Positions 6,196-59,800 of a stretch of 64,000 nt of DNA are shown piece by piece (within the stretch, counting starts at the first letter, position 1; every line of letters begins with the position of its first letter). The position numbers were made by a program, and so were the translations under genes. The notes below the pieces were generated by a model. The model was not told where the DNA came from, made no database searches, and worked only from the letters and a program-made list of their open reading frames with translations. This stretch comes from Ophelia neglecta (lineage: Eukaryota), in NCBI GenBank assembly GCA_965285935.1, contig OZ260662.1, forward strand, positions 20,584,001 through 20,648,000. The letters are read 5' to 3'.

Positions 6196-6331
6196 ATGGA
6201 TTTCCCGTTTTATTTAGAAGCCTTAAGAGAGCTCAATTCTCATACAGAAGAAGTAGAGTATGATTTTTTCAAGCAGGATGATGGTTTTCTGGGTATAACT
6301 TCCGCTCGAAGATTACTCAGCTTAGGAGCCG
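6196..6331 (+). CDS. HNMT-like coding exon 1, variant 1 (intact; distal to body B)
   Basis: gccgaaATGG start; MDFPFYLEALRELNSHTEEVEYDFFKQDDGFLGITSARRLLSLGA(G); 136 nt; donor G|GTAAGT in phase 1, matching exon 2. Confidence 0.8.
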
Positions 6332-9041
6332 GTAAGTAAAAAAAAATTACCTTATTAATCACTATATAAGATAGAACCAGTCCATAGAGTACTAAATTTT
6401 CTCAGCCATATGTTTTGTTCCCAATCAATGAGAGAAGTCTGTGGGTCATTTTTAATACTGTCTCATTTTATCGAAAAAAGAGAGTTTCTCAAACACTTTT
6501 CATTCCAAAGTGTTGATGGAGGGTAAATTTTTTCCCAAGTACTAAAACATCAGTTATTAATGAAGGAAAAGCGCAATTCTCCAGTCAACCGTCTTTAATA
6601 ATAGGTTTTTGCAAATAAATGCTGACAGTCTGCTCCAAAACTTTCCAGGCCGCTTAGTCCAGTGGCAGATGAACCCCCAAAAATGGACCAACAATATTTT
6701 GCTTTTTTTTTGGTCTACTGATCAAGAATAATGCCACTTCGGTACGCTTGAAGAATTTGAAATATCAAGTTGGCGGCCATTTTATAAAGTTGGCAATTGG
6801 TGGATTATATGTTGAGGTATTTAGAATTTGATTAAAGGGGGGGGGGAGGGATGATAAACATTATTTGTAATTATCAAGTTAATAAAGTAAATGAAGAATT
6901 AACTGACACTGAAATATAGAAAATGTCCGACAATGTGGCCGTCATTTACCCCTTTGTTGACTGTATATTGCCTGAGGTAAATGTCTGAATAAACGGTATT
7001 ATTTTTAAGAATTAAGTAATGGTTTCAGAACATATTGTTGTTTATTAAGACTCCACATATCTGGTGCATCATTCCTAATATATGTTTGATTTATGTATGA
7101 TATTCATATAATTACCCATTACACATGAGTCAGATGCTAATCGTAGTTTATGCAGTCTCATTCATGCTAAATTATACATTGTGATTTATAAGCGTCATGT
7201 ACACACCCTGTACTAAGAAAAGAAATAACATACTATGGTGGTTATCAATTCTTTCATCACGTTTCCAATTTTACAACATAATTCATTCAACACATCAAGT
7301 ACAAACCATGTACAGGGTGAAGTATTAACCATCGATGATTGGAAAACTTTATATTGAAAGCATAAAATTGATACCACACGCAATGAGGTGAAGCCAACAG
7401 TTTTCCATGACGGGAGTCAGAACACAAAACTAATGAATCAGTGGTCCACAGGACCCAGCTGAATTGTGCCCCAGGAGAGCTCTCCATAATACAGTGTTAG
7501 ACTCTTTTGTAATTATATCGCCTCGTTAATGCAATATAATGTTAACTATGAATACCATTCACGCTTTTATTGTGATTAAACATTCACTTGCATGTGCCAA
7601 GATATTATGTCAGTATGAAGCAGATACTATAACATTAGGAAGATGATGCACATGGCCCCTAGCTCTAGGACGTGCGGAATAGATCCCCCACGACAATTGC
7701 AATTTTACTGCATGTTCATCGTCTGCTCTGGTTGAAGGCAAATCGCTTACCTAAATACATTTCAACTCATGTACATCGGATTTTGATACTTTTTCCAAGG
7801 AAATCCTCACACAGATTGTATTTATTCGCGTATATATTTATTAATATTAACCCAAATATGTACATCTAAACATTAACACTCTGCCACACTCGATTCCATT
7901 TCTAGAGAAGGCTAAACTACTATATTCCTTTCATAGTTTCCTACTAATTTTCATTCCGTTTGTAAGAATGAGGGTATAGTCTAATTTGTCATCCACACTC
8001 ACATGTTAAGCCCAATATATATTTAATAGCCTTCCTGTTATTGAATATTCGTATTTCCTTGTTCTTTAATAGATTTATGTATTGCCTTGGTTTCGGAAGT
8101 TTGAATGAGATTGCCCACAGCTGTGACACCACAGTTGCAGCTTTATCAGACAGTATTCCCGCCGAAATTGGTATGATATTCAGTGGAAAGAATAATAAAT
8201 TAAAACGACTTAAGCGTCAATAACTTCGATTAATAGGACATAAGCATATTTTAAATAACTTTGCCAATATTTAATACGCATTTCTACAAGCATGTTAAAG
8301 TTCATAAAAGAATATGAATTTATTAATATTTATGAATTAGTATTTCCAGATGACAATATCGGTTTTTGCGCATAGCTGTTTAGATTTCACAATCCCAAAT
8401 ATGTGGTTAGATGGCATATAAATGGTTTATAAAATATATCTGACAAACGTAATGAATTGTTTTTGGCTCGCTGACGTAGCAATAGGAACCACATTGGCCT
8501 TCAGCAAAGTAAAGTACTCGGAAAATATCACTTGCTATTATCATATATATATGTCCCATCCCCTGCAGTTTGTTCCCGTTTCAGTAACAAAGAATGTGCA
8601 GGCTGACATTGATACCCCAATAAATGCACCACGGCCACATGTCAAAAAGAAAGTATACCTCTTGGCCAGTCAACGTCATGCACATGCAGGCTGACACCGA
8701 TCTCTAATAAATGTTTGATTTCTTAGATTACCAACCTAAACTTTCTGGTGACCTCTCACTCATCGGTCATACGGAACCCTTAACTAGGACAGTGTATATC
8801 AAATCGCAAAACCCTACTGTTGCTTCATTTATCAAATAACCTGAAGCCTTTGCATATTTATCAATAAATTACTATTATAGAAATGTTAGCTGAATGTTCC
8901 TGATGTAGGTGACACAAGAATTCCGAAGTGCATCCCAGCGAACTAACATGAAAACATGATAAACAGCCTCATATATGCAGACATATTTCTTTTTGGCAAT
9001 GCTGTACTAGAATCAACAAACGTAACTAGTTCATCGACAGG

Positions 9042-9993: not shown

Positions 9994-11178
9994 ATGTTAT
10001 TAGCCTGCCTATTGCTGGTACTGTCTCAGGCCTTGAGTGTCGTTCACCCCGTAGCCCCTCGTGTTCCCCCCAAAGAAATTCTCGACTTCGAGGAGGTCTT
10101 TGGCGTCGATGACGTCCTGAATATTTACTTGGTCTATCAGCCTATAGCTAGATAATTTAATTTATGCAAAAAGAAACCTCCTTTATGCAATAGCCATTTG
10201 CCATCGCCTAATCTCAGAGACCATGGGGTTATACGGAAATTGTATTGGATATTTTTTCCTTGAATTCAAAGTGGTTGTCATTTACTCTAAGCACACCCTA
10301 AATATAAAGTTTGCCCTGTTGACAGAATAAACTATTTCATTTAACATTTAGCGTGTAGACAAATAATTAAATTGTATTGGCAAAACCGCGATTTTTACTT
10401 CATATGGGCCTTATGCAAACACGGCGGACAATCTTTTATTTTTTTTTCTCTCAAAAAGTCGGAAAAAATGGCAGGTGCAAAAAATATTTACCCCTGGTGT
10501 GAAAGTCATCGACGCCGGTCATAAAAATGGTGCTGCCCGGCAACATCTTGTTTTGCGACGAAATTATTTACGGATTTAAACTTAGGCTCGGCTCATTCCA
10601 AAGTTGTATCATTTGACCGCTAAAGGCACTGATGCTATACCGATGAGATGGATTAAATCTATTCTCCAGTCTCGATGCGTTTTGGCCCGGTATGCAGGAC
10701 ATAGAAGTATGAAATATAGTTGTGCTATAGAAAGTAGAGAATACTTGTTTTACAAATTGGCCTATATTGCTTCAGCGATTGGTTCATCTAGTACGAAGCT
10801 AATAAATAGCCCAGATGCGCCCTAGCGGCAAGCTTTACAAAAGAACTATGACAACGTTTCATCGCATTACTAATGCTAGACATGTATTTAGCACAGGCTT
10901 ACCTTGACGGCGAGTGTTTAGCATGGCCTCATCTTGCCGCCCGGTTGGTTTAGCATGAGTCAAATTGCTAGGCGGGCAACAAAAACGTAGTAATATAGTA
11001 CAGCACACTGGAGCTTAAGCGCTAGAACTGGGTTATGAACTCACTGGCATAGCCCGCTGCCATATTTACCGTGAATTAGTGGTTACTTAACTGTTCCGCA
11101 GTAAAATACTCATCTGGTACCGAAAAGCTGTCATACCGAACACTCAACGGGATATATAGGTGAATACACTTTGCCGAA

Positions 11179-11314
11179 ATGGTTTTCCCGTTTTATTTAG
11201 AAGCTTTAAGAGAGATCAATTCTCATACAGACGAAGCAGAGTATGATTTTTTCAAGCAGCATGATGGTTTTCTACGTATAACTTCCGCTCGAAGATTTCT
11301 CAGCTTAGGAGCCG
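11179..11314 (+). CDS. HNMT-like coding exon 1, variant 2 (intact)
   Basis: MVFPFYLEALREINSHTDEAEYDFFKQHDGFLRITSARRFLSLGA(G); 136 nt; donor GTAAGC. Confidence 0.8.
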
Positions 11315-11419
11315 GTAAGCAAAAAAGATTACCTGATCAATCCCTTTAAAATAGAAAGAGTCCATAAAGTACTAACTTTTCTCAGCCATATGTTTAAGTA
11401 TGTTTTCAAGTATATAACA

Positions 11420-11616
11420 AATATGTGGACGGACAGGCTGGCTTCCGGGAGAAGCACATTTATTGACAATATTTTTGTTATGCGAGCTTTTCACGGAGAA
11501 ATGGCTAGGTGGGAAACGCCAAATATTTGCAGCAGTTGTGGAATTTAGCCGCCAACGCGTGGTACAAATTTACGAAGGCCGGCGAGAGGGGAAGAATTCT
11601 CTCATTTTTCAGACGC
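11420..11616 (+). mobile_element. Short fragment of the RTE-X-like LINE reverse transcriptase also at 29.4 and 49.1 kb
   Basis: QAGFREKH and EKWLGGKRQIFAAVVEFSR, paralogous to 49080-49295. Confidence 0.8.
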
Positions 11617-14402: not shown

Positions 14403-14748
14403 GGGACGCACCATTCAATATCTGGGGGGGGGGGGGGGGGGCGACAAATTTTTAAAAAAAAATTGTTTGTTTCTGGTTATGCATAAAAAAAATTGTTTGT
14501 TTCTGACTCTGGAAAAACATTAATTGTTTGTCTGATATTTTCTTTAAAATTTTTTTTTTTTTTTTAAAGTTTGATCAAGGCTAGGGAAAAAAATATTTGA
14601 TAGAGATTTGTTAGAAAAAAAAATTGTTTGCTTCCCAAATAGGAAAAAATAAATTGTTTGTTTGTCCAAAGCTAGAAATTTTTTTGTTTCACTAGAAAAT
14701 ATTTTGTCGCCCCCCCCCCCCCCCCCCAAATATCTAATGGTGCGTCCC
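14403..14748. mobile_element. PIF/Harbinger-type MITE upstream of exon 1 variant 3
   Basis: TIR GGGACGCACCATT / AATGGTGCGTCCC with poly-G and poly-C subterminal tracts; TTA duplicated at 14400-14402 and 14749-14751; empty site near 10990. Confidence 0.9.
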
Positions 14749-14818
14749 TTATATAGTACAGCACAAGCTGTCGTATCGAACACTGAACAGGATATAAAGG
14801 TGAATACACGTTGCCGAA

Positions 14819-14955
14819 ATGGATATCCCGTTTTATTTAGAAGCCTTAGGAGAGCTCAATTCTCATACAGAAGAAGCAGAGTATGATTTTTTTCAAGCAG
14901 CATGATGGTTTTCTACGTATAACTTCCGCTCAAACATTACTCACTTTAGGAGCCG
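14819..14955 (+). pseudogene. HNMT-like exon 1, variant 3 (frameshifted; nearest to body B)
   Basis: T7 instead of T6 in GAT TTT TTC gives 137 nt and an early TGA; also R>G, RR>QT and S>T changes; donor GTAAGC retained. Confidence 0.7.
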
Positions 14956-15056
14956 GTAAGCAAAAGAATTACCTCATCAATCACTATTTAAGATAGAACG
15001 AGTCCACATAGTACTAAATTTTCTCAGCCATACGTTTTAGTATGTGTTCTTGTTTC

Positions 15057-15128
15057 TGCGCGGGGCGCCTGCCCGCTGCTGCCTATGTTTAAATAGTTAT
15101 GGGTGGCGGCGGGTGGGCGTCTCGCGTG
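15057..15128 (+). other. GC-rich 31-bp stem-loop in intron 1 (copies at ~37449-37520 and ~57123-57194)
   Basis: 15057-15087 pairs without gaps to 15098-15128 using only Watson-Crick and G-U pairs; 10-nt loop. Confidence 0.75.
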
Positions 15129-18555: not shown

Positions 18556-21500
18556 GTGACGGACACTTTGAGGATCAGCTAACCAAACAAGGTTTATTAA
18601 AGAACTTAGAACTTTACCATGCTGTCGAACCAAACGCGACGGTTTTAGACAGTCTGAAGTCTCGGATACAGGCTCTTTTTCCTAAAGCGTTCGTATGTTG
18701 AAGAATTTTTTATTATTTAATGGCAATTAAACCAACAAATTCCTTAAACTGATTATGCAAGTTTTAGGAGTCTTCTGATATGCATCAAAGCGATGCGAAT
18801 GCCCAGGACGTAGGCATTTGCCTATACTGCATTATTATGTTTCCTACTTACAGACAATCTTTCAACAATTACCGGCGGATGAGTTCGAAGGAATAGCAAA
18901 AAACGGCGACGATGAGATGGATAAGACACCGGAAAAATACGACGTCATACTAATAATGCGCATGCTCAGCTATGTAAAGGACAAGGTAGATTGCATCATA
19001 GATATGTATAATCCATATGTATTCTCTATGTCTATGATTGCATGCACTTTTTTTTAGGAGTGTGAATTGGTCGAGTGTCGAAGTGCGAGTTAAAAAGGCG
19101 AGGAGCGAGATAAAAAGTCGAGGAGTGAGTTAAGAAAGCGAGGCCCGTCCTCAACCACGAGTGACATGACCTGGTAATTCTCACGTGCAGGCAAATCGAA
19201 TGCGCCCTGCCCAGGAATGTTAAATTAAATGTTTGGGTTTTAACGTCCCTTTCAACACTTGAGAGGTCATATCGGGATAGGGAGTCTCTTGGAACGATGA
19301 GGCGAAGGTCTGATGAATCACTCCCCCACACAAGGTTAGGTTGAAAACAGCCCTCTCAAGCTGGGTTCGAACTCAGACCTTGGAGGTCGGAGGTCCAGCA
19401 CGCTACCACTGGACCACGGAGACTCCCTCCCTGCCCAGGAAGCGCTCGAGTTGCACCACAGCAGGCTGAGGTAGACTTATATTAGTCCGGTAAAAACGAC
19501 TAGGAAGCGTTCATTATATATGGCCGGAGGGGGGGGGGTTAATTTAATTTTTTTTTGGGTGGGGGGGCCTTTATTCAACCCATTTCCATGGGGGGGGGGG
19601 GGATTTTTGTTAACCTATTCACAGGGGGGGGGGGGACGATTTTTTTTAACCTTTTAACAAGGGAACGCGTTTTTTCACGTATTTCTTATTGACACTTTTG
19701 GGTAGCTATTTTATTGAAATATATATTGTACAAAAGTGTGTAGTGAAACTGCAAATGCAAATGATCAAACTTAGACAAATTCCAGATTTTATACAGTAAT
19801 GACATATGAATAGCAGGTATATACAACTCTTTTGGCATGAAATGATACATTATACCCATGACTCCGAATTCAGAACAAATCATAAGGTACAAAATGATTT
19901 ATTTCTTATTTATGAATGTGCACATTGTTATAAGCGATGCAGTCCTGGTTAATCCATTATTATCATACAATACTTATCAAAACAATGAGATAATAACAGA
20001 TTTAGGACTTGTAGAAATGTAAAATATGACAAGATGTTCGCAGTGACACAGAACTAGCAATCATGAATCAGTAATAAACATTGACAAACATAAAACGAGT
20101 TACGATAGTGTCTGCTGTGCAACAGCCTGACACAAAATTATATATATCACGCAACACTGACCAGACATGCACACTAAAACAAATCGACTCGTATGCACCA
20201 ATACAGCACTTACAAAACTTGAAAGAACAGTGATACATATATCCAATTGAAATAAAAATCAAGTCTAATAACTGGAATTACGAGGATGTTTGAATGAGGA
20301 TGTTCCATTGGGCCACCCCCTATGGGGCCAATTGGTCAATGTACCTGCTGTCTCCCTAACTTTCATGTGATAGATGTATTGACATGACGTGCAATAATAC
20401 ACAGTACAACTTTTACAAACTATTTCCATGGCGATGACAATATCACAAAAATCGGGAGAAAGTCCATTAAATCAACGAATCAAAGACAAAATATATTTAT
20501 TTGGCTCAGCTTAATTGAAGCTTTGATATTAATAAATAGCACCAGGGACATTGAACTAAAATAAAATCATCGAAATATATGCTAAAATGATCAAATCCTG
20601 AACAACATCCACTCAAAAAGTTTCATACCCTCTATATCTAATGACATGCTATGACTCGAATCATTAAAAATTAATGTTGGTCCCTTCAATTGAAGTAACT
20701 GACGAGCACATGCACAGTACCACATGAAAGCATCCCGCTCACATCCAAATACTCCTTTCCCCTCCGCACTAGAGATGGAGAAATATCATCGAGTGAATAA
20801 CAACTTGTCTTTGATGGGGGGGGGGGGGGATTATTTTTCCACTTATTTCCGAGTGGGGGTGATATTTTTCCAGCTTTTTCTGAGGGGGGGGGATATTTGT
20901 CCACCTATTTCGGAAGGGTGTGGGCAATTTTTCCCATCTATTTCCAAGGGGGGGTGCAATTTTTTGGACGTATTTATTTCAAACATTTACCACCACTACT
21001 ACGCACCCACCCACCCCCCCCCCTCCCCCATCCCCCGGCCATAAATAATGAACGCTCCCTTATCAATCAAAGGATAATCTGACGTAGATTATCGTAAAAA
21101 TTTAAAATATAGGGTATTAATAATCAAAAGGGAAGAGCATTTGAATTGAGAATCAAAATATAACGGAAATTAATCAACCATTGCATTATCATTGCTGTGG
21201 AAAATATTCTTTCACGTAAATTTGCAAAATAGGTCTTATTGACCTTCCCCTCTCTTTCTTAACTCGCTCCTCGAATTTCATCTCGCTCCTCGCTTTTTTA
21301 ACTCGCTCTTCGCTGCTCCACCAATTTACACAGTCATTTCTTACCTTAGTCCCGGGTTGCCGGTTACTACATCCAATTCACAAATGAGTTATTATGATGA
21401 AATGGGATGTATCTGACAACATACGCTCACCCTACACAGGTACCATCTGGTGCAATTTCTAAAAAACAATCATCATCCTTTGGCCAAACTATTCGTGTTC

Positions 21501-24500
21501 CAATGGGTTAGTTTCCTGAATGGTGGGAAGTTGAACATTATCAGGAAATGTTCACCTTATTTTGGCAATATAGATGATTTATTTTGGTATATAAATTAAT
21601 ATTGCAGACAATATTTTCTGCTATGTTCGGGTCTTTATCACAAAAGAGAAAATGATTTCGATATTCAGATAGTAAATTTCCCATTCCTTGGCGGCAAGAT
21701 TTTTATTTTCCAAGCTATTAGATGATATTTCGAGGACTCTGGGTTTTATAAGAACTTAAGCGTGTGCTGGATGAAGGGTTGTTCGCTTGCCTCATAATTA
21801 CATCACCTATTGATGGCTTCAATTCATATATTGTTACACTAACTTATTTGAATTCTGGTACAAAGTGTCACTAGAATTGTCGTCCTTGCCTCTTAATAAC
21901 ATCAATATTCCTGTCCTCAAATATAATAGCAACAAATATATATGGCATATTGTGTGTGCTGTTACGACATATAAGTCATTTTTATATAAAATAAGTTCAA
22001 TAATGACATCATTAAAAGTGTTACGTGTTATTTTCCTTGCGAATAGTGGTTTGTATAGAAAAAATTAACATACAGAGAAGGGTCACTCTCTGTGACATTT
22101 CTTTATCCTAACCATAGGACCCATAACACGATGCTCATTTCATAACAAATAACACCATGTATTACCAAATTTGATTTGATCTTTAAAAGGTAAGACTTCT
22201 TCGCCTCGCATATTCCTTGTTACTTGAAGGCGGGAAAATGATAATTATCCACAATGAAGGTGCCTCTACATTTTCGCTTTTTGGTGAGTTGTTTTGTGGT
22301 ATTTGTTTTGAATTTTAACACTTTAACAGTTTGCATATAGAATCACATGTTTAGCAAGTTTCTTTTTCAACTGATTTGATTTATTGTCACACTTAATTTT
22401 GTGATAATAATGAATGCCCCTGGATCGGGTACTAGATGGCCCAACGCTCTCAATTCTAGCATACTGTTGTTTGCTATAAAGAACCATGTACAAGAATACA
22501 TTATTCGCAGCGACCAAAATCCTATTATCAACATTCTTATTTAGGATCATATTCCCAATTTAAATGCTGCAATTCTTCAAATTCCTGGAATATCAACTGT
22601 CTGATGACACTCTAAAAATCTTAAGTTGATGCCTTGTAGACGAAACAATAGCATTGATTATGAAAGCGGTCCGCAATAATCGCGAACCACCAGCCACAGG
22701 CCCATAAATCTCACATACAAATAAATGTCCAGCTCCCAAACAGTAAATAATGTTTGAAGAAGATAATAGATATTGATGTTGTTTGCAATGAGAATCGGTC
22801 AACAGTTTTCCATGATGCCAGTCAGCCCTAAACAAACGGGTTTATGGTGAAGGTAGGACCGATAAAATATGATCCAGCATGGCCTATAATGGTCCAAGCC
22901 ATATCACCATTAGGACACTAAAGATGAAATTTTCAATAATCAATTGCCAATGCGCCCAGAAAATGGACTTCCCGTTGAGGTACAGCCCCATAAAATTATT
23001 CACGTCATAATTATAGAATAAGATTATATTGCTCTTATCTTAAGGGACAAGTACATTATAAATTTAGGCAAAAAAAGTGATAATTGAATTTATTGATTTG
23101 ACCATGCATATATATTCAGAGGCGACATGGTACACTCTTTCTCATAATGTATGGTAATGTCACCTTTTTTTATATATCGCAAACATGGTCGTCTTTTCAT
23201 TCCACACAATGCCGATATTGACATATTCCTGTTTCTAAAACTGTTGCAATGATTCAGATGTGTCTGAACACAGAAGTACAACTTGTATCTGCTGCAAGAG
23301 ACTTTAGATATATGTGTGCGGGAATTTGTCTGCTGGTACCTGGTTAATTTGGACCGATTGTTTGACAATTCTTGATAACCTATTTTGTTTTGTCTGTCTT
23401 GTATCTACTTCCGTTTTTATCGATTAACATGCAATTAATGAAATGTGTTTTTCTTCAAAAATCGCCATTTTAAGCTTTAAAACGCTACATGCAGTTTTCA
23501 GATCCTAATGGACATTGCATATACTATAAGCATATATATGTGTTCAGTAGAATAAAAAATCGAGTGTTGTATTTGTCAATGTGTGCATCTTGCACTCTTA
23601 TATATAATATGGGTGCTATTTATAGGTGAGCGTTTCGGCATAAGTAAGAGACAGTACTACGCCCGTCACATTGCAGAGGATTTGAAAAGCGCAGGTCTCA
23701 TTTACAAAGGTAAAACGCACTGTTTAATGGTTTATACGGCAGTTTTCTCGTTACTTTTATTACTTGAGAAGTTGGGTTTTTTGTCAAATGTATGTGCATG
23801 CCAAAACATGTTCATCTAGTGACATGACAGTTGGGGTTATAAAAACTGCAAACTAGAATTCAATGAAATAAATGGATGGATTTTTATGGTAACACGACTT
23901 CTTATTCTTAAGAAGAAGTCGAACATTGTTGCTTTGGATGTAGTTAGCAAACATTAATGATGCTAAATAGGAAAAGCTAAGTAGAAATGTCATATACTGC
24001 ATACACAATTATTCGTGGGAAATATATCATTGTAGAATATCAAGAAACTTAATACTTGAGATTAGTACATTATATCAGATACATATAGTTGCACTATACG
24101 TCTCTGATTATATGGAGTATTGGCGGAAACCGTCCCTGTGATGAAGCAGTAGGTCCAGAAGGTTACTTATTTTTGCAATTTCACAATTGATGGGACGAAG
24201 AAGATAGTTGGAGGGAGGGGGACATTATCAACCCTCTCTTTGAGAAAATTTTGCTAAATATGACTTTTATGACATTCTAATTAATTAGTATAATATTAAT
24301 GTACCCAAATTCGACAAAACTGACTCTTGGCAGGATGGACTTGGCACTGAAGAAGTTTAATGAGGAAATTTCTGGTTCGGATAGGAATTCATCTAATACA
24401 TATATACATTACATGGAGTTCTGTAGGAAACCATTCCTGCGACGAAGTAGTAAGTCCAATGGGCGACTTATTTTCGTAATTTGACAAATGATAGGACCGA

Positions 24501-29145: not shown

Positions 29146-29281
29146 ATGGATTTCCCGTTTTATTTAGAAGCCTTAAGACAGTTCAATTCTCATACAGAAG
29201 AAGCTGAGTATGATTTTATCAAGCAGCATGATGGTTTTCTACGTATAACTTCCGCTCGAAGATTGCTCAGCTTAGGAGCCG
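29146..29281 (+). CDS. HNMT-like coding exon 1, variant 4 (frame intact, weak donor)
   Basis: MDFPFYLEALRQFNSHTEEAEYDFIKQHDGFLRITSARRLLSLGA(G); 136 nt; donor is GTTCGC. Confidence 0.65.
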
Positions 29282-29384
29282 GTTCGCAAAAAAAATGTAC
29301 CTTATCAATCACTATAAGATAGAACGAGTCCAAAAAGTACAAACTTTTCCCAGCCATATGTTTTAGTATGTGTTCTAGCATTCA

Positions 29385-34121: not shown

Positions 34122-34247
34122 ATGGATTTCCCGTTTTATATAGAAGCCTTAAGAGAGCTCAATTCTCATACAGAAGAAGCAGAGTATGATTTTATCAAGC
34201 AGCATGATGGTTTTTACGTATAACTTCCGCTCGAAGTTTAGGAGCCG
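34122..34247 (+). pseudogene. HNMT-like exon 1, variant 5 (frameshifted)
   Basis: 1-bp deletion gives GGT TTT TAC GTA TAA, plus a 9-bp deletion; donor GTAAGT retained. Confidence 0.8.
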
Positions 34248-40200: not shown

Positions 40201-43200
40201 GTTTAGCGAGTTTCTTTTTCAACTGATTTGATTTATTGTCAAACTTAATTTTGTGATAATAATGAATGCCCCTGGATCGGCTACTAGATGGCCCAACGCT
40301 CTCAATTCTAGCATACTGTTGTTTGCTATAAAGAACCATGTACAGAAAACATTATTCGCAGCTGCCAGAATCCTATTATCAATATTCTTATTTAGGATCT
40401 TATTCCCAATTTAAATGCTGCAATTCTTCAAATACCTGGAATATCAACTGTCCGATGACACTCTAAACATCTTGAGTTAATGCCTTGTAGACGAAACACT
40501 AGCATTAATTATGAACGTTTATGACAGCGGGCCGGAATAATCGCGAACCACCAGCCACAGGCCCATATATCTCACATACAAATAAATCTCCAGCTCCCAA
40601 ACAGTAAATAAAGTTATAAGACGATAATAGATATTGATGTTGTTTGCAATGAGAAGCGATCAACAGTTTTTCGTGATGCGAGTCAGCCTTAAACAAACGG
40701 GTTTATGGTAAAGGTAGTACTGATAAAATATGATCCAGGATGGCCTATGATGGTCCAAGCTATATCACCATTAGGAGATTGAAGATGAAATTTTCAATAA
40801 TCAATTGACATTACACCCAGAAAACGGCCCCATAAAATTATTCGCGTCATAATTATAGAATCTGATTACATTGCTGTTATCTTTAGGGACAAGTACATTA
40901 TATAATTTAGGCAAAAAAAAGTGATAATTTAATTTATTGATTTAACCATGCATATATATTCAGAGGCGACAACGTACACTGTTTCTCATACTGTATGTTA
41001 ATGTCGTCTTTCTTTATATATCGCAAAAATGGCCATGTTTTCATACCACACAATGCTGATATTGTTATATTCCTGTTTCTAAAACTTTTGCAATGATTCA
41101 TGTGTGTCTGAACACACAGAAGTACAACTTTTATCTGCTGTAAGAGACTTGAGACATATGTGTGTGGGAATTTGTCTGCTGGTACCTGGTTAATATGGAC
41201 CGATTGTTTGACAATTCTTGAAAACTTATTTTGTTTTGTCTGTTTTGTATCTACTTTCGTTTTTGTCGATTAACATGCAATTAATGAAATATGTGTTTTT
41301 CTTTAAAAAAATCGCCTTTTTAAGCTTTCAAACGCTACATGCAGTTTTCAGATCCTGATGGACATTGCATATACTATATGCATATATACTGTATGTGTTC
41401 AGTAGAATCAAAAATCGAGTGTTGTATTTGTCAATGTGTGCAGCTTGCACTCTTATATATAATATTGGTGCTATTTATAGGTGAGCGTTTCGGCATAAGT
41501 AAGAGACAATACTACGCCCGTCACATTGCAGAGGATTTGAAAAGCGCAGGTCTCATTTACAAAGGTAAAACGCACTGTTTAATGGTTTAAACGGCAGTTT
41601 TCTCGTTACTTTTATTACATGAGAAGTTGGTTTTTTGGCAAATTTATGTGCATGCCAAAACATATACATCTAGTGACTTGTCATTTGGGGTTATAAAAAC
41701 TGCAAACTAGACATAAATGAAATAAATGGGTGGATTTTTATGGTAACACGACTTCTTATTCTTAAGAAGAAGTAGAAAATTGTGGCTTTGGATGTAGTAA
41801 CCAAACATTAATGATGCTAAATAGGAAAAGCTAAGTAGAAATGTCATATACTGTCAACCCTCTCTTTCAGAAAATTTTGCTTTATATGACTTTTATGACA
41901 TTCTAATTAACTAGTATAATATCAATGTACCCAAATTCGACAAAACTGACTCTTTGGAGGATGGGCACTGAAAAAGTTTAACGAGGAAATATGATTTTTG
42001 GTCCGTAAAGGAATCATCTAACACATATATACATTAAATAGAGTTCTGCAGGCCCTGCGACGAAGTAATAAGTGGAATAGGTGACTTATTTTTGTAATTT
42101 GACAAAAGATAGGACGAAAGAGGTCCCCATCCTTCTTTTTTAGAAAGTTTTGCTTTATATGATTCTTTTGACATTCTAATTATTTGATTGAATAAAAATT
42201 GGCGGGCATTAACTAAATAAAATATAACGCAGAAGGGAAAACCTTGAAAAAATGGAAAAGAAAACTTGGAAGGGCGGACTTAGCACTGCAGAAGTTTAGG
42301 GAAATTTGATTTCTGATTCGGATAGTAGTAATGTAATGTAAATTCAATGGACCAACATCGACTTACATATCACGTAGCAATAAACTGTTTACATCTTTAA
42401 GATATTTGACCACCTGACGCCTGTGTCCCGCTACCTATGTATAACTAGTTATACTAAGGCTGCTGCGGAGAAGCGTCCAGTGTACCTGTGGATTAATTAT
42501 AATTTATTATTATTTAATTTTAATTGTAGCATAAACAATAACAATATAAGCTATGGCAAATAGATTTTGTGAATTTAATGTAAAACCTGAACAGATGTTG
42601 GCATACACAGTATGTTCACGTTTAAAGGAAGAAAGTTTGATGGAAATAAACACTCATTAATATAAAAAAAAACATGGCAAAAACATAAGTCTATTTCTTC
42701 AGTTTCTTTCGAAATGACAAAAAAACCTATTTCTGCCAGAATATAAAATAAATTCGTTTTTTTCCATAGAACAAACGGCCTGTCAGATGTTGATGTTGCC
42801 CACAATGTTTAGTAAAGTTATGAGATTTATCGTGCGCCTTAATAAAATTTATGGCCAAAATTCGCATGTTCCGGATAAGAAATCCTCTTTCAATGTTTAA
42901 TGACAGTTACGAGTCTTGACACGAAAAAAGGAGTTATCAATTATATGTCATTCAAAATAATACTTTCGGGGAACTTCCTTTCAACTAAGACAATTATAAC
43001 AAAACACATGTTGTGACCGTTGTATTCATTTTGGGAATTGGGCAAGGTATTCGAATTGCAACAATCGTGTTTTAAGATGTATTCGCTCAGGTCAGCGCAA
43101 AAACTTATTTATTCTATCTTATGTATTGTCACAAATATTAATAATTACACGTACTTTTCCGTCATATGAGTACAATTACGTAGGCAGAGAGATGGTTTAT

Positions 43201-44374
43201 AAAGAACTCTTTTTGCTATCATTAATTGTTGTTTCACGAAAACGTTTGTATATTTTGTCCTCAATACGTATCACATATTAACCAAATTTCTAGAACATTG
43301 TATTATCTTCTTTCAGAATACAAAATAACGGACTACCTTAATCATCGAGGCACATCAAAACTGGTAGCAAACATTTACTTCATGAGAGAAGCTTCAGATA
43401 CGGAGGTATGGTATCATAGATATCAAAAAATACGTTTAGTTATTTATAAAGCTACAGGCAATAGACCTACATGCAACGCAATACCCAATGTATCACATTA
43501 GGGACTGTAATGTGATTTAACATTACATTCTGATCTCCCCAGAAGGGAACAGGGGTAATTATTCTTATTTATTAAAAAAGTCATCAAAAAAGATTTCAGC
43601 AACTTTTTGCTATGCTCGACGGATAAGCATAAACAAAGTTCATTTGATCTTTGCCCCTTCCTTCCTTCAGATATAACCGATCTTATGGAATATGAAAATA
43701 TAGGGGGTGGATTTACAAACTTGCCAAAAATTGACTTGAAACGTTGTCTTTTAGCGGAGAACAAGTATTTGTATTTGCAAATTAATCTGCTTTCAAAATT
43801 GAACTCTTTTATTTCCTAATGTTCTCGTTTAAGACCGTTTATGCACGTTGGTGTTCATTCAGTATTTCTCACACCACTTGCCTGTTCACAAAACTCAAAA
43901 ACTTAAGGTCATCATACTGGGATGGACGTAATACAGGACAATACATTGAAAATATAAAGAACTTATGACCTTCAGCTGCTATATCAATATGATCAATTTG
44001 AGTATCCTTATATGTTAAATAGTCTCCCTTTTCTATACGTTACACCATTCTTCAAGGGTATACGAAGCAAACAATATTTCAAATCAAATGGGAGAGTCCG
44101 GTTGCATTATTAGCTTTAATTCGACGGGGCTAAAGTTAGATTTTTACTCTAAATTTATCCTCAAATTTAGGATTTCGCTGAAATAAATAATTAAATGAGT
44201 ATTTTAGTAATCAGTACTATGCACAATAAACACTATTCCATACTTGTAATAGACATTTTTTAAACATTCCAGTATGAGAAGTTCCGCGAATTCATTGACG
44301 AAGTTGTACCATCAGGGAGGGAACCTCTCCCCCAGTCAATATTTGTGATTGAAAAGCCCAAACATAGCTGTTGA
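37216..44374 (+). CDS. HNMT-like SAM-dependent methyltransferase copy C, complete, 260 aa (exons 37216-37351 [exon 1 variant 6], 38722-38858, 39030-39170, 40042-40135, 41481-41564, 43317-43405, 44273-44374)
   Basis: Seven GT-AG exons total 783 nt with no internal stop: MDFPFYLEALRDINSHTDE..RLLSLGAG|DGHFED..HAVEPD..KYDVILIMRMLSYVKDK..SIFVIEKPKHSC*. Class I MTase motif I is split by intron 1; colinear with HNMT. Confidence 0.92.
38190..38560 (-). mobile_element. Decayed LINE ORF2 C-terminal remnant in intron 1 (also ~57860-58230; split by the LINE in copy B)
   Basis: SAIAKYF..RTRCVLCSNLC..KSKIHV resembles the AKFR..C..C..E.EIHV CCHC region. Confidence 0.4.
39330..39600 (+). mobile_element. Decayed Penelope-like RT fragment in intron 3 (also ~21480-21740 and ~59005-59275)
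   Basis: QTIRIPMG, FRYINDL (NIDDL in copy B) and LYHKRENDFDIQIVNFPFLGSN match the Penelope-like motifs GIPMG, RYIDD and LYDKRDDF.F.IVNFPFL.SN in order. Confidence 0.75.
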
Positions 44375-48845: not shown

Positions 48846-48981
48846 ATGGTTTTCTCGTTTTATTTAGAAGCCTTAAGAGAGTTCAATTCTCATACAGAAG
48901 AAGCAGAGTATGATTTTATTCAGCAGTATGATGGTTTTCTACCTATAACTTTCGCTCGAAGATTACTCAGCTTAGGAGCCG
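48846..48981 (+). CDS. HNMT-like coding exon 1, variant 7 (intact, most diverged)
   Basis: MVFSFYLEALREFNSHTEEAEYDFIQQYDGFLPITFARRLLSLGA(G); 136 nt; donor GTAAGC; small deletion just upstream of the ATG. Confidence 0.7.
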
Positions 48982-49074
48982 GTAAGCAAAACAAAACCTT
49001 ATCAATCACTATAAGATAGGACGAGCCCATATAGAACTCACTTTTCTCAACCATATGTGTTCTACTATATAACA

Positions 49075-50735
49075 AATATGTGGGCGGACATGCTGGCTTC
49101 CGGGAGAAGCACGGGGTTATTGACAATCTTTTTGTGATGCAAGTATTTGCGGAGAAATGGCTAGGTGAGAAACGCCAAATATTTACGGCAATGGTGGACT
49201 TTAGCCGCGCTTTCGACTCTGTAGTACACGCCAACGCGTGGTACAAATTAATGAAGGCCGGCGTGAGGGGAAGAATTCTCTCATTTTTCAGACGCATGTA
49301 TGAAGAAAAAGGCGCTTGTTCGTGATCAGACTGGGACCCTGGGGGAGGAATGGACGTGCGGTAATGGGGTACGCCAGGGCGATGTGGCCAGCCCTCTAAT
49401 ATTTGCCTTCCTAATCAACGATCTTGAGGAGCCGCTATGCCGGAGTAATATCGACAGTCCTGATTGGGACCCCCTAGGCGTGGCACTCCTGCTTTACGCC
49501 GATGATTGTTTGATCGTTTCCACTACGGCAGAGGGGCTACAGAGAGGACTTCACAGCCTATCAAACTGGTGTAAAGAATGGCCACTTACGGTCAACCAGG
49601 ACAAAACTAAAATCTTCATATATCGCCACGGTCGAAAAATGCCACCCGAAAAGTTGTATTATGACGGCACGAAACTTGAGAAGGTAGATTCATTCCTATA
49701 TCTAGGAGTACTACTGAACGGTAACAACCCATGGAAAGAGGCCAAATCCAGAACCCTTAGCCAGGCTGGCAAGGCGATGTGTGGACTGGAAGTAAAACTC
49801 CACAGATTGGAATTCACTGTGACAGAAAAGGTTGAACTGTCCAACATTATGGTACTACCAGTCCTGTTATACGGGGCGGAACTATGGGGCTATGAACCCA
49901 GCCCACAACTGGACCGGTTTCAATTGGCTTTTGTAAAGCGTCATCTTCATCTAAAGAAAACAACCACTACCGCCATGATATTGATGGAGTTGGGCATCTC
50001 CCCAGCTAGTGAACTAAGAGAGAGCAGGGTGGTGGGTTACTGGGCCTCCCTGATCGATCCAACACACAGATATAAACTGTCTAGCAAGCTATATTTAGAG
50101 ATGCGAAGGTCGACTAGAGATATCAGGTGGTGCACCGGTGTAAGAGACATATCGTCTCTTCAAGGATACGGTACGGAATGGCGGACCAATCAGATCACCA
50201 GAAAACAGTCCTTCATGGCTAGATATAAGGACGTCTCCAGAGAGCATACGTTCATGAACTCCTTTATTATGTGTGTCGAAAGTAGCAAGGGCGAATTATA
50301 CCATGACCTTGTGGCGAAGTCCGACGTGGGAGAACCCGCCTGGCATTTGTTAAATCTGGACTATGGTAACGCCATCACACTCACCAGGTATCGCCGGAGA
50401 AATTGCTCCGTGGGGTCAGGAACCTGTAGCTGGAAAAACAGACCTACTAGTAATAAACCGTGCAATTATAGAGGTTTGGTTGATGATGATTGCCACTTTT
50501 TGCTACAATGTGACAGATTCGATAATCAGCGAAATCAATTAATCGACAATTGTTACAGGCTAGTCCCAACACAGCAGACGGTGGTAAGACTGCTAACGGC
50601 GAGATGTCGGAGAACGCTAAACAGACTGGCCCGATACATCCGAGAGTGTGACAGAATGAAGAAGGATGTTTAGATAGAACTCTGCCGCCAAAGAGACATG
50701 GATGCACTGGGGGTGAACGACTCCTTTATGGCATC
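49075..50735 (+). mobile_element. RTE-X-like LINE, RT and C-terminal zinc-finger-like region (one frameshift near 49310)
   Basis: AGFREKH, VDFSRAFDSV, GVRQGDVASPLIFAFLINDL, LLLYADD, YLG, CHFLLQC; 457-aa ORF at 49300-50673. Confidence 0.95.
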
Positions 50736-52255
50736 CACCATATGGTCGCCCTGAATTAGAGCACTATCATCCATCCCCGATATATAACTGAAGTTTACAC
50801 CATTTAGATTATCCCCTATAACATGTGATTGACTATTGCGAAGCCAGTGTTCCTGTAATAAAATTATATCATGACCGTCCATTAAATCACGTAGATATTC
50901 CCATCTTGGTTCATTTATACCATGTATATTATATGAGCATAATTTCAGTGTATGTAGAGCCATAAGGGCTAGCTATTGTTATCTCTAGGCATTATGTACC
51001 TTCTGACTCGAACACCATGGGGCCACATTTCTTCATCAAGTAGGCGTTTAAATTCAGATACACCGACAGTGAGTTTGAATGACTTAAATTTAGCATTGAC
51101 ATTTGAAACGCATTTAAGTTTTATTAACTGGATCCCTAAGTCGGAGACATGATCACGAATGTGGCAACCTTCAGTGCTAGCGTCCACACGATAGACAAAT
51201 AAGTCTCTCTGTGGTTCAGGGGCACCTCGAAATCTGGTGTCGGACTTGGTCCCAGTTACGGTTTTGTTCTCACGTTTTCTGCGACGCCGTTCATGTTTTT
51301 GAAATTCAAAGCCGGCTGATGAGTCAGAAAATCTACTTTGCCGATCAATTGAAAGACAGCTCTCAGCCCTCTGAAGTCTATTAAATATTGGTTCCTTATT
51401 ATGCATTCCTTGATTTGCGTCCATGGACTTTGATTGGGGTCTCAGCGAATCATCGTGGTGAACTGGACGCTGATGGTTTCTCCCCTTTGGGATATCAACA
51501 GGGTACGCACTATCGATAGCAGAGTAGTGTCAAGGCATCTAGTATATCATCAAGTTCGAAGGCTTGTTTTGGTCTTATACTCGATCCCTTCCGGCATTTT
51601 CTTTGGGCTTATCAGCATTTTATCAAAACTAGACCATAGTTTTTCTTTCGAGTTATGAATTGTCGTCGGGGAAAGAAAGCTTAGTACTGCTCTCCGGACA
51701 TTGTCCCTGGTACCACTTTGAAGACTAAACACTATGTAGGCCAAAAGTGGGTCCTCAAACTTAACATTGGTGGCATCTGAAGGTGGGGTATCTGGTCTGA
51801 CCTCCCATTGGCCTCTGGGTTGGAAATGTTATCTTTGTAAAGGGTTTTTGTGACGGTCTCTTCACGACACTAGGATGTGGAGGTGGGTGCATCCTCAGTA
51901 TATATCCTGTTGTCATCGAGTTTCTTCACCTCGGTTTCATCACTACCATTGTCATTACAATCGCTGGCTGGGTCATCCTCATTCTCATTAATTAGTCTAT
52001 CAGTAAACTCTTCAAGATTACAGCTTCCACCCAGAATCTGTGAACGGCTTATACTGGCATGAGCCAAAAAGGAAATCAACACTCTCTTCAAGATCAACAA
52101 ATCCCTTGAATAATGCTTGTGACACTCGATTAGTGTGCTTTTGGCACAGTCCCCAATCAGTATAGATACCCAGTTGTTTCCCTTTAGCAACCTCATAATA
52201 GGTTTTACGCTCACTGTTATCTTCACGGGGCCCATCGTCAAGCATCATCATCAGT
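50736..52255 (-). mobile_element. Second copy of the LINE 5' part (ORF1 plus APE start)
   Basis: ORFs 50670-50963, 50969-51424, 51550-51744, 51870-52241 and 52018-52251 are near-identical to those at 31.2-32.8 kb. Confidence 0.85.
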
Positions 52256-53576: not shown

Positions 53577-53711
53577 ATGGATTTCCCGTTTTATATAGAA
53601 GCCTTAAGAGAGCTCAATTCTCATACAGAAGAAGCAGAGTATGATTTTATCAAGCAGCATGATGGTTTTTACGTATAACTTCCGCTCGAAGATTACTCAG
53701 TTTAGGAGCCG
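53577..53711 (+). pseudogene. HNMT-like exon 1, variant 8 (frameshifted)
   Basis: Same 1-bp deletion as variant 5 (135 nt, early TAA); donor GTAAGT. Confidence 0.8.
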
Positions 53712-56700: not shown

Positions 56701-56889
56701 CCTCATCCTGCCAATTGGTTTGACATGACCAACTAAAACTGGTCAATGAACTCACTGGAGTTTCTCGCTGCCATATTTACCGTGAATTGGTGGTAACTTA
56801 ACTGTGCCGCAGTAAAATACACATCTGGTACCGAAAAGCTGTCGTATCGAACACTCAACGGGATATATAGGTGAATACACATTGCCGAA

Positions 56890-59800
56890 ATGGATTTCCC
56901 GTTTTATTTAGAAGCCTTAAGAGATATCAATTCTCATACAGACGAAGCAGAGTATGATTTTTTCAAGCAGCATGATGGTTTTCTACGTATAACTTCCGCT
57001 CAAAGATTACTCAGTTTAGGAGCCGGTAAGCAAAAGAATTACCTGCTCAATCACTATATAAGATAGAACGAGTCCATATAGTACTAACTTTTCTCAGCCA
57101 TATGTATGTGTTCTCTTGTTTCTGCGCAGGGCGCCTGCCCGCTGCTGCCTATGTATAAATAGTTATGGGTGGCGGCGGATGGGCGTCTCGTGTGTCTGTG
57201 TGATTGACAAATAAGGAACACCCATTCTCGGGCGCTTCATGCTAATCTGGTTCAGGTGCTTTGTTATATCATCATCATATTTCTTGCAATACTATTAATC
57301 TATTGTATTTGTATTATTATCGGTTGTGCACCATTTTTATAAACAAGTGACTATTGTTATATTTTATTGTAAATAGTAGGCTATTTTACAAATATTTTGT
57401 TACAATGGCTCTTTAATTTTTCTTTAATAACCAGTTTTTGGACTACTTTATTGATTATACTTAATCGTATCATATTGCTCCCTGCCTACTTTCCAGTTTC
57501 TTGGTGTTTTGGAACTGGTGACTTAGCAGACAAATCACACGTTATGTCACTTAATGATTAGTATAGTTACTCCCTCATCTCATGTCATCATATCATTTTT
57601 TATCCCACGCATATTTATAAAGATTGTCTCAATGATTTATTCGAAAATTACCTTTTTCGAAGCCCTTGGCTTCTGCAAAATCCAAATTATGTAAATAAAT
57701 ATGTTAAGACCAAATACTTAAATTGACTTCTGAAATGACATAAGGATATGGACAGGATGAATAGATAAATAGAAGTCACTCTGTGCAACAGTGCGAATCC
57801 ATACATGATCAAATTTTTGTTAAGGGTGTAGAGAGATCTGCTTATTTCCAAATACCTTCATGTAAACATTAAACGAATACCAATTGTGTTTTGGTCACAT
57901 CACTGGCATGAAATTGATATATTCATATTTTCTTACGTGGATTTTACTTTTGACAAGAATCATACACAAGTTGCTGCAAAGAACACACCTTGTTCGTTTA
58001 CCCCACAGTGTAAAGTGTAGATTGAAACAATGGAACAAACAATTTATCAAATATACCTCAAGGAAATATTTGGCAATAGCACTGATAGGATTTCTTGGGG
58101 ACAAGATTTATTGAAAACAAATCAAGTCACTAAGATTTAACAACACTTCGAAGGTACAGCACTATTAGCACCATTAGACTGGACAAATTCATGCAGTTAA
58201 ACATGTTTGAATAACATCCTGAATTTGGAAAGGTTACAATGGGGACAGCCTTTCAGTTGGTAGGCATGTTTTCAATCAATCTCCTTTTGAATATAAAGAG
58301 AGTTTGACTCTTATATACGAGACGCGCACAAAGCGATATTGAGGCAAAACGGACAACACGACGATGTAAGAACCGTTACTCAATAATTTTTGCAGGTGAC
58401 GGACACTTTGAGGATCAGCTAACCAAACAAGGTTTATTAAAGAACTTAGAGTTTTACCATGCTGTCGAACCAGATGCGACGGTATTAAACAGTCTGAAGT
58501 CTCGGATGCAGGCTCTTTTTCCTAAAGCGTTCGTAAGTTGAAGAATTTTATTATTTAATTTAATAGCAATTAGGCCAACAAGTTCCTTGAACTGATTTTG
58601 CAAGTTTTAGGAGTCTTCTGAGATAAACCAAACATCAAAGCGATGCGAATGCCTAGGACGACGGCATAGGCATAGACTGAATTAATATGTTTCCTACTTA
58701 CAGACAATCTTTCAACATATGCCGGCGGATGAGTTCGTAGGAATAGCAAAAAACGGTGACGTCATCGTTGATGAGATGGAAGAGACACCGGGAAAATACG
58801 ACGTCATACTAATAATGCGCATGCTGAGTTATGTAAAGGACAAGGTAGATTACATGCACTATTTCTTACTGAAGTCCCGGGTTGCCGGTTACTACATCCA
58901 ATTCACAAATGGGTTTGTCATGATGAAATGGGTTATATCTGACAACATACACTCACCCTACAGAGGTACCATCTGGTGCAATTTTTTGATAAACAATTAT
59001 CATCCTTTGGCCAAACTATTCGTATTCCAATGGGTTAGTTTCCTGAATGGTGGGAAGTTGAACATTATCAGGAAATGTTCACCTTATTTTAGGTATATAA
59101 ATGATTTATTTTCGTATATAAATAAATATTTAAGACAATATTTCCTGCTATGTTCGGGTCTTTATCACAAAAGAGAAAATGATTTCGATATTCAGATAGT
59201 AAATTTCCCATTCCTTGGCAGCAATAGTTTTATTTTCCAAGTTTTTGAATGATATTTCGAGGCCTCAGGTTTATAAGAGCTTAAACGTGTGCTGTATGAA
59301 TGATTGTTCGCTTGCCTCATAATTACATCACCTATTGATGGCTTCCATTCATATATTTTTACACTCACTTATTTGAATTCTGGTACAAAGTGTCACAAGA
59401 ATTGTCGCCCTTGCCTCTTAATAACATCAATATTCCTGTACTTAAATATAATAGCAACAAATATATATGGCATATTGTGTGTGCTGTTACGACATATAAG
59501 TCCTTTTTATATAAAATAATTTCAATAATGACATCATTGAATGTGTTACGTGTTATTTTCCTTGCGAATAGTGGTACGTATAGAAAAATTTTAACATCCA
59601 GAGAAGGGTCACTCTCTGTGACATTTCTTTATCCTAACCATAGGACCCATAACTCGATGCTCATTTCATAACAAATAACACCATGTAGTACCAAATTTGA
59701 TTTGATCTTTTAAAGGTAAGACTTCTTCGCCTCGCATATTCCTTGTTACTTGAAGGCGGGAAAATAATAATTGTCCACAATGAAGGTGCCTCTACATTTT

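What the first reader, a model, noticed from the sequence alone, without database searches (positions are those of the whole stretch)
6196..57025. Nine first coding exons for three methyltransferase bodies: candidate variable-first-exon system
Seen: exon 1 with several hundred bp of upstream sequence starts at 6196, 11179, 14819 | 29146, 34122, 37216 | 48846, 53577, 56890, exactly three before each body. All keep the ATG and a GT at the same position; six keep a 136-nt open frame ending in phase 1 that joins exon 2 to rebuild motif I (LSLGAG|DG). I found no exon 2-7 sequence between cassettes of one triplet. Known: UGT1A and clustered protocadherins splice alternative promoter/first-exon cassettes to shared constant exons. 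Inference: this may be a young, independently arising version for a small-molecule N-methyltransferase; I know of no such description for HNMT-like genes.
Basis: partly seen in the sequence, partly recalled or inferred. Interest (0 to 1): 0.9.

Follow-up and report, generated by a model that had tools for sequence, protein, structure and literature searches.

The report
Duplicated first exons before methyltransferase genes
An invertebrate genome carries a tandem array of methyltransferase genes, each preceded by two or three copies of its promoter and first coding exon; the spare copies could serve as alternative first exons, but no RNA data exist and I found no sign that selection maintains them.

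Summary
All nine exon-1 copies lie at the stated coordinates. Six keep a 136-nt phase-1 open frame, and no remnant of exons 2-7 lies between them. The window is part of a larger array: six gene units on one chromosome carry 2, 3, 3, 3, 3 and 2 exon-1 modules. A single-copy paralogue on another chromosome has one exon 1.

A 5' module (upstream sequence, the ATG exon, about 90 nt of intron 1) was duplicated twice before the array expanded. This gave three module types (D, M, P), told apart by their downstream junctions. Unit duplication, unequal crossing-over and gene conversion then spread and shuffled them.

The distal modules look competent: ATG, open frame, consensus donor, no conserved acceptor. 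A transcript started there should splice to exon 2 by default.

No public RNA run holds the locus, so usage is untested. Within the array exon 1 evolves at about dN/dS 1 in all three types, while exons 2-7 sit at 0.3-0.6. Disabling lesions hit proximal and distal modules about equally. The encoded N-termini are at least 76% identical to the reference proximal copy.

My reading: young, redundant, largely neutral alternative first exons or orphans, not a UGT1A- or protocadherin-like diversity system. Drosophila hydra is a close precedent. The HNMT-like assignment has only weak tool support.

The parts
6196..6331 (+). Exon-1 module, type M, distal in unit U1. ORF intact, donor GTAAGT, 2.2 kb of upstream sequence homologous to a proximal module.
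11179..11314 (+). Exon-1 module, type D, middle position in unit U1. ORF intact, donor GTAAGC, followed by a 227-nt remnant of the retroelement that marks type D.
14819..14955 (+). Exon-1 module, type P, proximal in unit U1. It has a +1 frameshift (T7 where the other copies have T6 or TTTTA). Homology to other proximal promoters stops at -54.
14403..14749 (.). High-copy MITE-like insertion with about 45-nt inverted ends and G16/C18 tracts, in the promoter of the 14819 module. Next to it about 135 nt of proximal promoter are missing.
   Evidence: (unitig depth up to 28,000)
18556..26930 (+). Body of unit U1. Exons: e2 18556-18692, e3 18854-18985, e4 22190-22283, e5 23626-23709, e6 25899-25987, e7 26829-26930. 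All frames are open and all splice sites canonical. Intron 3 holds a 2.3-kb insertion.
29146..29281 (+). Exon-1 module, type D, distal in unit U2. ORF intact but donor weakened to GTTCGC. Retroelement fragments follow at 29383-30906 and 31133-32043.
34122..34247 (+). Exon-1 module, type M, in unit U2. Broken by a 1-nt and a 9-nt deletion. The promoter lacks the stretch that corresponds to -178..-31 of proximal modules.
37216..37351 (+). Exon-1 module, type P, proximal in unit U2. Intact; intron 1 runs on to exon 2.
38722..44374 (+). Body of unit U2. Exons: e2 38722-38858, e3 39030-39170, e4 40042-40135, e5 41481-41564, e6 43317-43405, e7 44273-44374 (with stop). With exon 1 the CDS is 783 nt, 260 aa.
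48846..48981 (+). Exon-1 module, type D, distal in unit U3. ORF and donor intact. A 15-nt deletion lies just upstream of the ATG.
49073..51497 (+). Dispersed retroelement, 5'-truncated and in sense orientation, starting about 92 nt after the donor of the D module. Its reverse-transcriptase ORF is at 49300-50670.
   Evidence: (PF00078, E 1.7e-18)
53577..53711 (+). Exon-1 module, type M, in unit U3. It carries the 1-nt frameshift and the same promoter deletion as 34122.
56890..57025 (+). Exon-1 module, type P, proximal in unit U3. Identical to the 37216 copy.
58396..64000 (+). Body of unit U3. Exons: e2 58396-58532, e3 58704-58844, e4 59716-59809, e5 61155-61238, e6 62991-63079. Exon 7 starts at 63947 and runs 48 nt past the window end.
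1120..2132 (+). Tail of the preceding unit (Um1): e6 1120-1208, e7 2031-2132.

Best explanation
The locus is a six-unit tandem array (about 130 kb) of a seven-exon, 260-aa SAM-dependent methyltransferase gene, probably HNMT-like.

Before the array grew, a 5' module was tandemly duplicated twice. The module holds upstream or promoter sequence, the ATG-bearing 136-nt exon 1, and the first 87-100 nt of intron 1. The result was three module types (D, M, P) that differ in what follows the shared core.

Whole-unit duplication, unequal crossing-over between modules and gene conversion then copied and shuffled them. The order is M-D-P in some units and D-M-P in others. Two units have only two modules, and one of those modules is an M/P hybrid.

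Inferred, not shown: the distal modules keep ATG, frame and a consensus donor and have no conserved acceptor. A transcript started at one should therefore splice to exon 2 of the next body. That would make them redundant alternative first exons giving almost the same protein.

Nothing in their evolution shows that this is selected. I take them as a young, largely neutral by-product of a very dynamic array, not as a diversity-generating system.
For: Architecture and copy numbers.

Three junction types, with a shared core from -31 to +220. The D junction is a dispersed retroelement.

The M/P hybrid in the last unit and the staggered blocks of 98.3-99.6% identity show ongoing unequal crossing-over and conversion.

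Five of six bodies are intact with canonical splice sites. dN/dS is 0.3-0.6 within the array and about 0.3 against the chromosome-7 paralogue.

Exon 1 against that paralogue has pS 0.35-0.45 and pN 0.05-0.10. Within the array, changes by codon position are 17:14:16, and amino-acid versus silent variants are 29:10, close to the neutral ratio of about 3.8:1.

Each module type has one lineage with a disabling lesion, and every intact body keeps at least one intact module.

Precedent: in Drosophila hydra at least four of nine duplicated first exons act as start sites (PMC1904467).
Against: There is no RNA evidence, so 'would splice by default' is inference.

Sense-oriented retroelement fragments downstream of D modules could terminate or trap transcripts.

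Substitution counts are small (39 variants in exon 1). Weak purifying or diversifying selection cannot be excluded.

No substitution has created a stop or destroyed a start in 47 inferred changes, where about 3.5 are expected. I computed P of about 0.03 by hand from the fractions; itself gives P = 0.08 for stop gains alone. This hints at some constraint.

Exon 1 changes at half the per-site rate of the adjacent intron. Conversion or alignment noise may explain this, but so could selection.

Proximal copies show an excess of amino-acid changes (12:1, against 40:27 in the body; Fisher P = 0.027). A purely neutral view does not predict that.
Confidence: 0.5

Rival explanations
1. Silent orphans. 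Only the proximal (P) module is ever used. Distal modules are dead remnants of partial duplications that look intact only because they are young and are refreshed by gene conversion. Units whose proximal module is damaged (U1, perhaps the last unit) are genes that died recently.
For: Exon 1 evolves at about dN/dS 1 within the array.

Three of nine window copies are frameshifted and one has a weak donor.

M modules of units 2 and 3 lack 147 nt of proximal promoter.

D modules are followed at +92 by a sense-oriented retroelement.

Conversion and unequal crossing-over are evident.

In the first unit of the array (outside the window) the body is already a pseudogene.
Against: Proximal copies are no better conserved than distal ones: 12 amino-acid versus 1 silent variant in P, against 19:9 in M+D.

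The proximal module of U1 is the most damaged of all, with a frameshift and promoter loss, yet the U1 body is fully intact.

Some distal modules share 0.65-2.2 kb of upstream sequence at 81-92% with proximal promoters, so silence would need an extra cause.

No nonsense or start-loss substitution is seen in any copy.
Confidence: 0.3
2. Adaptive variable-first-exon system. Each module has its own regulated promoter. The slightly different N-terminal 45 residues, which in HNMT would line the substrate pocket, tune specificity, as in UGT1A.
For: All structural requirements are met.

The N-terminus of HNMT (Phe9, Tyr15, Phe19) contributes to ligand binding and is conformationally flexible (PMC8533269).

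Amino-acid changes are in excess in exon 1 relative to the body in proximal copies.

Every intact body keeps at least one intact module.
Against: The encoded N-termini are 76-91% identical to the 37216 copy, far less diverged than UGT1A or protocadherin variable exons.

No test rejects neutrality.

Module number and order vary between units through recent rearrangement.

Lesions accumulate.

Family membership in HNMT is itself only weakly supported.

There are no RNA data.
Confidence: 0.15
3. Assembly artefact. Near-identical blocks are haplotypes or mis-joined repeats, so the number of modules per gene is overstated.
For: Blocks of 7-15 kb at 98.3-99.6% identity lie side by side.

All three DNA runs come from one sample and are short unitigs that cannot span the repeats.
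Against: The three module types differ by 5-25% and have distinct junctions, so the triplets do not depend on the near-identical blocks.

Block offsets differ (18.9, 19.5, 24-25 and 35.7 kb), and units differ in insertions.

Unique inter-module sequence is present in independent unitigs at single-copy-like depth.
Confidence: 0.03

Closest known systems
Drosophila melanogaster hydra (nine tandemly duplicated alternative first exons; PMC1904467)
   Same: The first exon was duplicated repeatedly in tandem within a young, fast-evolving locus. Copies are flanked on the 3' side by a transposon. The whole locus was also duplicated. Ka/Ks is elevated but below 1.
   Different: hydra is a de novo gene with no known protein family. 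Here the gene is an old enzyme family with a conserved single-copy paralogue. For hydra, use of at least four first exons was shown by RT-PCR and 5' RACE. Here nothing is shown at the RNA level.
UGT1A, GCNT2 and clustered protocadherin loci with multiple variable first exons (PMC1885805, PMC3325998)
   Same: A tandem array of first exons, each with upstream sequence and a donor, lies in front of one set of constant exons. In UGT1A the variable exon encodes the substrate-binding part of a small-molecule-conjugating enzyme.
   Different: In those loci the variable exons are long and strongly diverged, each has a proven promoter, and adaptive evolution has been reported. Here the exon is 136 nt, copies are 90-100% identical at the DNA level, only 2-3 stand per constant set, and the whole arrangement is itself repeated six times.
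Histamine N-methyltransferase (PDB 1jqd, 1jqe) and HNMT-like carnosine N-methyltransferase (PMC3660329)
   Same: The protein is about 260-290 aa. A glycine-rich SAM motif follows an N-terminal helix. The exon-3 motif (YDVILIMRMLSYVKD) aligns to HNMT residues 134-150.
   Different: Similarity is not significant in exon-by-exon searches (E 0.36). The substrate is unknown. Nothing I found in the papers searched describes multiple first exons for HNMT genes.

Membership tests
Gene cluster with multiple variable first exons (UGT1A / PCDH type) | Two or more first exons in tandem, same orientation, upstream of a single set of constant exons | tested here: met
   2-3 exon-1 copies per body, with no exon 2-7 remnant between them.
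Gene cluster with multiple variable first exons (UGT1A / PCDH type) | Each variable exon has a 5' splice donor and no 3' acceptor, so it can only be a first exon | tested here: met
   15 of 16 copies keep GTAAG. The only AG with a modest pyrimidine tract upstream (about -77) is not conserved in the chromosome-7 paralogue. Judged from sequence only.
Gene cluster with multiple variable first exons (UGT1A / PCDH type) | Each variable exon has its own active promoter | tested here: inconclusive
   Upstream homology to proximal modules ranges from 31 nt to 2.2 kb. Four modules lack the -178..-31 or -190..-54 stretch. There are no CAGE or RNA data.
Gene cluster with multiple variable first exons (UGT1A / PCDH type) | Transcripts join each variable exon to the first constant exon | not testable with these tools
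   No RNA run holds the locus. The only holders are DNA unitigs of one sample.
Gene cluster with multiple variable first exons (UGT1A / PCDH type) | Variable exons encode diverged protein segments kept by selection | tested here: not met
   N-termini are 76-91% identical to the 37216 copy. Changes by codon position are 17:14:16, and amino-acid versus silent variants are 29:10, near the neutral ratio. Lesions occur in all three types.
HNMT-like class I SAM-dependent methyltransferase | Glycine-rich SAM-binding motif I after the first beta strand | tested here: met
   LSLGAG|DGH is rebuilt across the exon 1 / exon 2 junction in every unit. Read from the sequence.
HNMT-like class I SAM-dependent methyltransferase | Significant sequence similarity to HNMT or a methyltransferase Pfam family | tested here: inconclusive
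Searched exon by exon only. Methyltransf_12 at E 0.11. HNMT 1jqd residues 134-150 at E 0.36, ranked third. Atlas methyltransferase cluster at score 0.79. Exons 1 and 2 gave nothing.
HNMT-like class I SAM-dependent methyltransferase | Rossmann-like methyltransferase fold with an HNMT-type substrate domain | not tested
   This needs the spliced protein, which has no single reference, so folding was left out.

The most novel reading that the evidence does not exclude
The distal modules are working alternative first exons that back each other up. Units whose proximal module is dead (U1: frameshift plus promoter loss; the last unit: promoter deletion) stay functional by starting at a distal module 7-12 kb upstream. 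If so, this is a variable-first-exon locus caught at birth in an enzyme gene, before any specialisation.
Probability: 0.3. Interest if true: 0.55.

Novelty: new member of a known kind. Interest (0 to 1): 0.35.

Why it matters
If the distal modules are used, the array would be a natural series of the earliest stages of a variable-first-exon locus. It would show duplication, redundancy, loss of one or another copy, and hybrid formation by crossing-over, six times side by side. The exon concerned probably forms part of the substrate pocket of a small-molecule methyltransferase. That would make the origin of UGT1A-like designs open to test. If they are not used, the locus is an ordinary example of partial duplicates carried along in an unstable tandem array.

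Tried and rejected
RNA evidence. The look-up of sequencing runs found no RNA run, only three DNA-like runs from one sample. I used the single read-laying run on 10500-16400. It returned short unitigs that neither span the modules nor settle the T7 frameshift at 14819.

Family assignment, exon by exon.
- Pfam and PDB with single exons gave nothing significant.
- PDB with exon profiles gave only one weak HNMT hit.
- The search for homologous proteins with the open frame around exon 3 found nothing.
- An exon-1 profile against 1.8 billion representatives returned two unrelated repeat proteins.
- The Atlas search gave only a weak methyltransferase lead.

Ideas rejected.
- Remnants of deleted gene bodies between modules: none found.
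- Retrotransposition or template switching as the origin of D modules: rejected, because D modules carry up to 1.5 kb of sequence homologous to proximal upstream regions.
- A conserved acceptor in front of the ATG exon, which would make these mutually exclusive internal exons: not supported.
- Rfam and tRNA scans of the window: empty.
Full report
OBSERVATION. In the genome search they match the 37216 copy at 90-100% identity.

All nine keep the ATG and a GT at the donor position. The copy at 29146 has changed GTAAG to GTTCG. Six copies keep the 136-nt open frame that ends in phase 1: 6196, 11179, 29146, 37216, 48846 and 56890. The copy at 14819 has one extra T in a T-run. The copies at 34122 and 53577 share a 1-nt deletion, and 34122 also lacks 9 nt.

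GENE MODEL. I defined the gene by comparing unit 2 with a paralogue on another chromosome (G000:C7, loci L001 and L002) and by reading the splice sites. It has seven exons with canonical AG/GT sites and a CDS of 783 nt, or 260 aa.

No trace of exons 2-7 lies between modules, by blastn or by a permissive tblastn.

WIDER CONTEXT. The window is G000:C2:20584001-20648000. Searching the whole assembly and fetching both flanks shows six gene units in one orientation over about 130 kb. They carry 2, 3, 3, 3, 3 and 2 exon-1 modules. The chromosome-7 paralogue has one exon 1 for one body.

The first unit, outside the window, is a pseudogene: it has a 2-nt deletion in exon 2 and has lost exon 7. The other five bodies are intact.

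MODULE ANATOMY AND HISTORY. All 16 modules share a core from -31 to about +220 relative to the ATG, that is, until 87-100 nt into intron 1. What follows defines three types.
- P (proximal): intron 1 continues to exon 2.
- M: followed by sequence found only in this array.
- D: followed at about +92 by a 5'-truncated, sense-oriented dispersed retroelement. Its reverse-transcriptase ORF is at 49300-50670.

Upstream homology to a proximal module ranges from 31 nt to 2.2 kb. These are therefore DNA-level tandem duplications of a 5' module, not retrocopies.

The order is M-D-P in two units (including 6196, 11179, 14819) and D-M-P in two others. The last unit has D plus a hybrid with an M-type upstream region joined to a P-type exon and intron. 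The crossover lies between -12 and +19.

Staggered blocks of 7-15 kb at 98.3-99.6% identity link neighbouring units. A tree of the core is poorly resolved, and types are only partly monophyletic. Together these results show that the triplets arose once, were copied along with the units, and are still being reshuffled by unequal crossing-over and gene conversion.

STATE OF EACH MODULE.
- Unit 1: M (6196) and D (11179) are intact. P (14819) is frameshifted, carries a high-copy MITE-like insertion at 14403-14749, and lacks about 135 nt of proximal promoter.
- Unit 2: D (29146) has a weak donor. M (34122) is frameshifted and lacks the stretch that corresponds to -178..-31. P (37216) is intact.
- Unit 3: D (48846) is intact apart from a 15-nt deletion before the ATG. 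M (53577) is broken like 34122. P (56890) is intact.

Each type thus has one damaged lineage, and every intact body keeps at least one intact module.

SELECTION TESTS.
- Exons 2-7 give dN/dS of 0.3-0.6 between units and about 0.3 against the chromosome-7 paralogue. Within the array their changes by codon position are 23:10:36, with 40 amino-acid against 27 silent variants.
- Exon 1 was well constrained on the long branch to the paralogue (pS 0.35-0.45, pN 0.05-0.10).
- Within the array exon 1 changes are spread 17:14:16 over codon positions, with 29 amino-acid against 10 silent variants. The neutral ratio is about 3.8:1.
- Proximal copies alone give 12:1 and distal copies 19:9. Proximal copies differ from the body (Fisher P = 0.027). 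Distal copies do not.
- Exon 1 changes at about half the per-site rate of the next 83 nt of intron. With no codon-position bias, this fits conversion or alignment noise as well as it fits selection.
- No substitution has made a stop or removed a start in 47 inferred changes, where about 3.5 are expected. From the fractions I computed P of about 0.03 for all copies and about 0.09 for distal copies only. itself printed P = 0.08 for stop gains alone.

In short, distal modules are not decaying faster than proximal ones, but nothing shows that they are maintained.

EXPRESSION. No public RNA run holds the locus. The three holders are DNA unitig sets from one sample. Laid on 10500-16400, they confirm the unique inter-module sequence at single-copy-like depth and show the high-copy element before 14819. 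They cannot settle the T-run frameshift. Use of the distal modules is therefore untested.

HOW IT MOST LIKELY WORKS (inference). A module with upstream sequence, ATG, open phase-1 frame and a consensus donor, but no acceptor, can only act as a first exon. A transcript started there would contain the downstream modules as intron and would splice to the first acceptor, exon 2. This needs no special mechanism and would give a protein differing in 3-11 of 45 N-terminal residues. Sense-oriented retroelement fragments after D modules might cut such transcripts short.

I put about 0.5 on the locus being a neutral by-product whose distal modules are structurally competent. I put about 0.6 on at least one distal module producing spliced mRNA, 0.3 on complete silence, and about 0.15 on an adaptive system.

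FAMILY.

Support is weak. Exon 3 gives Methyltransf_12 at E 0.11. Its profile hits human histamine N-methyltransferase residues 134-150 at E 0.36, third in rank. The Atlas gives a methyltransferase cluster at 0.79. Exons 1 and 2 find nothing.

The glycine-rich motif at the exon 1/2 junction fits a class I SAM methyltransferase. From memory, the protein also appears colinear with human HNMT. That is a lead, not a test. If the assignment holds, exon 1 would encode the N-terminal segment that in HNMT contributes Phe9, Tyr15 and Phe19 to ligand binding (PMC8533269).

COMPARISON AND NOVELTY. Tandem arrays of first exons in front of shared exons are known from UGT1, GCNT2 and PCDH (PMC1885805, PMC3325998).

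The closest match is Drosophila hydra. It has nine tandemly duplicated first exons, most flanked 3' by a transposon. At least four are used as start sites, the whole locus is also duplicated, and the coding sequence evolves fast (PMC1904467).

I found no description of this for an HNMT-like gene in the papers searched. I class it as a new member of a known kind, of moderate interest until RNA data exist.

An earlier report on this genome also said that no RNA data could be obtained. My search agrees with it.

Noticed in passing
window 14403-14749: A MITE-like element of about 350 nt. It has about 45-nt terminal inverted repeats that each include a long homopolymer (G16 on one side, C18 on the other). 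Its copy number is very high in the DNA runs (summed unitig depth up to 28,000, against about 50 for unique sequence).
   Followed up: partly
window 49073-51497 (also 29383-30906 and 31133-32043): A 5'-truncated non-LTR-type retroelement with an open 457-aa reverse-transcriptase frame. Copies at 87-94% identity lie on several other chromosomes, so the family may still be young.
   Followed up: partly
window 18997-21335: A 2.3-kb insertion in intron 3 of unit 1 that is absent from units 2 and 3. It has G-run and C-run rich stretches that translate as Gly/Pro-rich frames. It may contain further copies of the homopolymer-bearing MITE.
   Followed up: no
window 31133-45982 versus 50585-65665; 46753-53793 versus 65665-72706 (extended coordinates): Staggered near-identical blocks (98.3-99.6%) with different offsets along the array. 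They indicate very recent unequal crossing-over or conversion. They are worth checking with long reads as possible haplotype mis-joins.
   Followed up: partly
G000:C7:12882995-12893450 (L001, L002): A single-copy paralogue of the array gene with the same seven-exon structure and one exon 1. It is a useful outgroup and probably the conserved founder-type copy.
   Followed up: partly
L004-L006 (G000:C2:20534870-20561000): The first unit of the array is a pseudogene: 2-nt deletion in exon 2, exon 7 lost, and about 13 kb inserted between exons 5 and 6. It still carries two intact exon-1 modules.
   Followed up: partly
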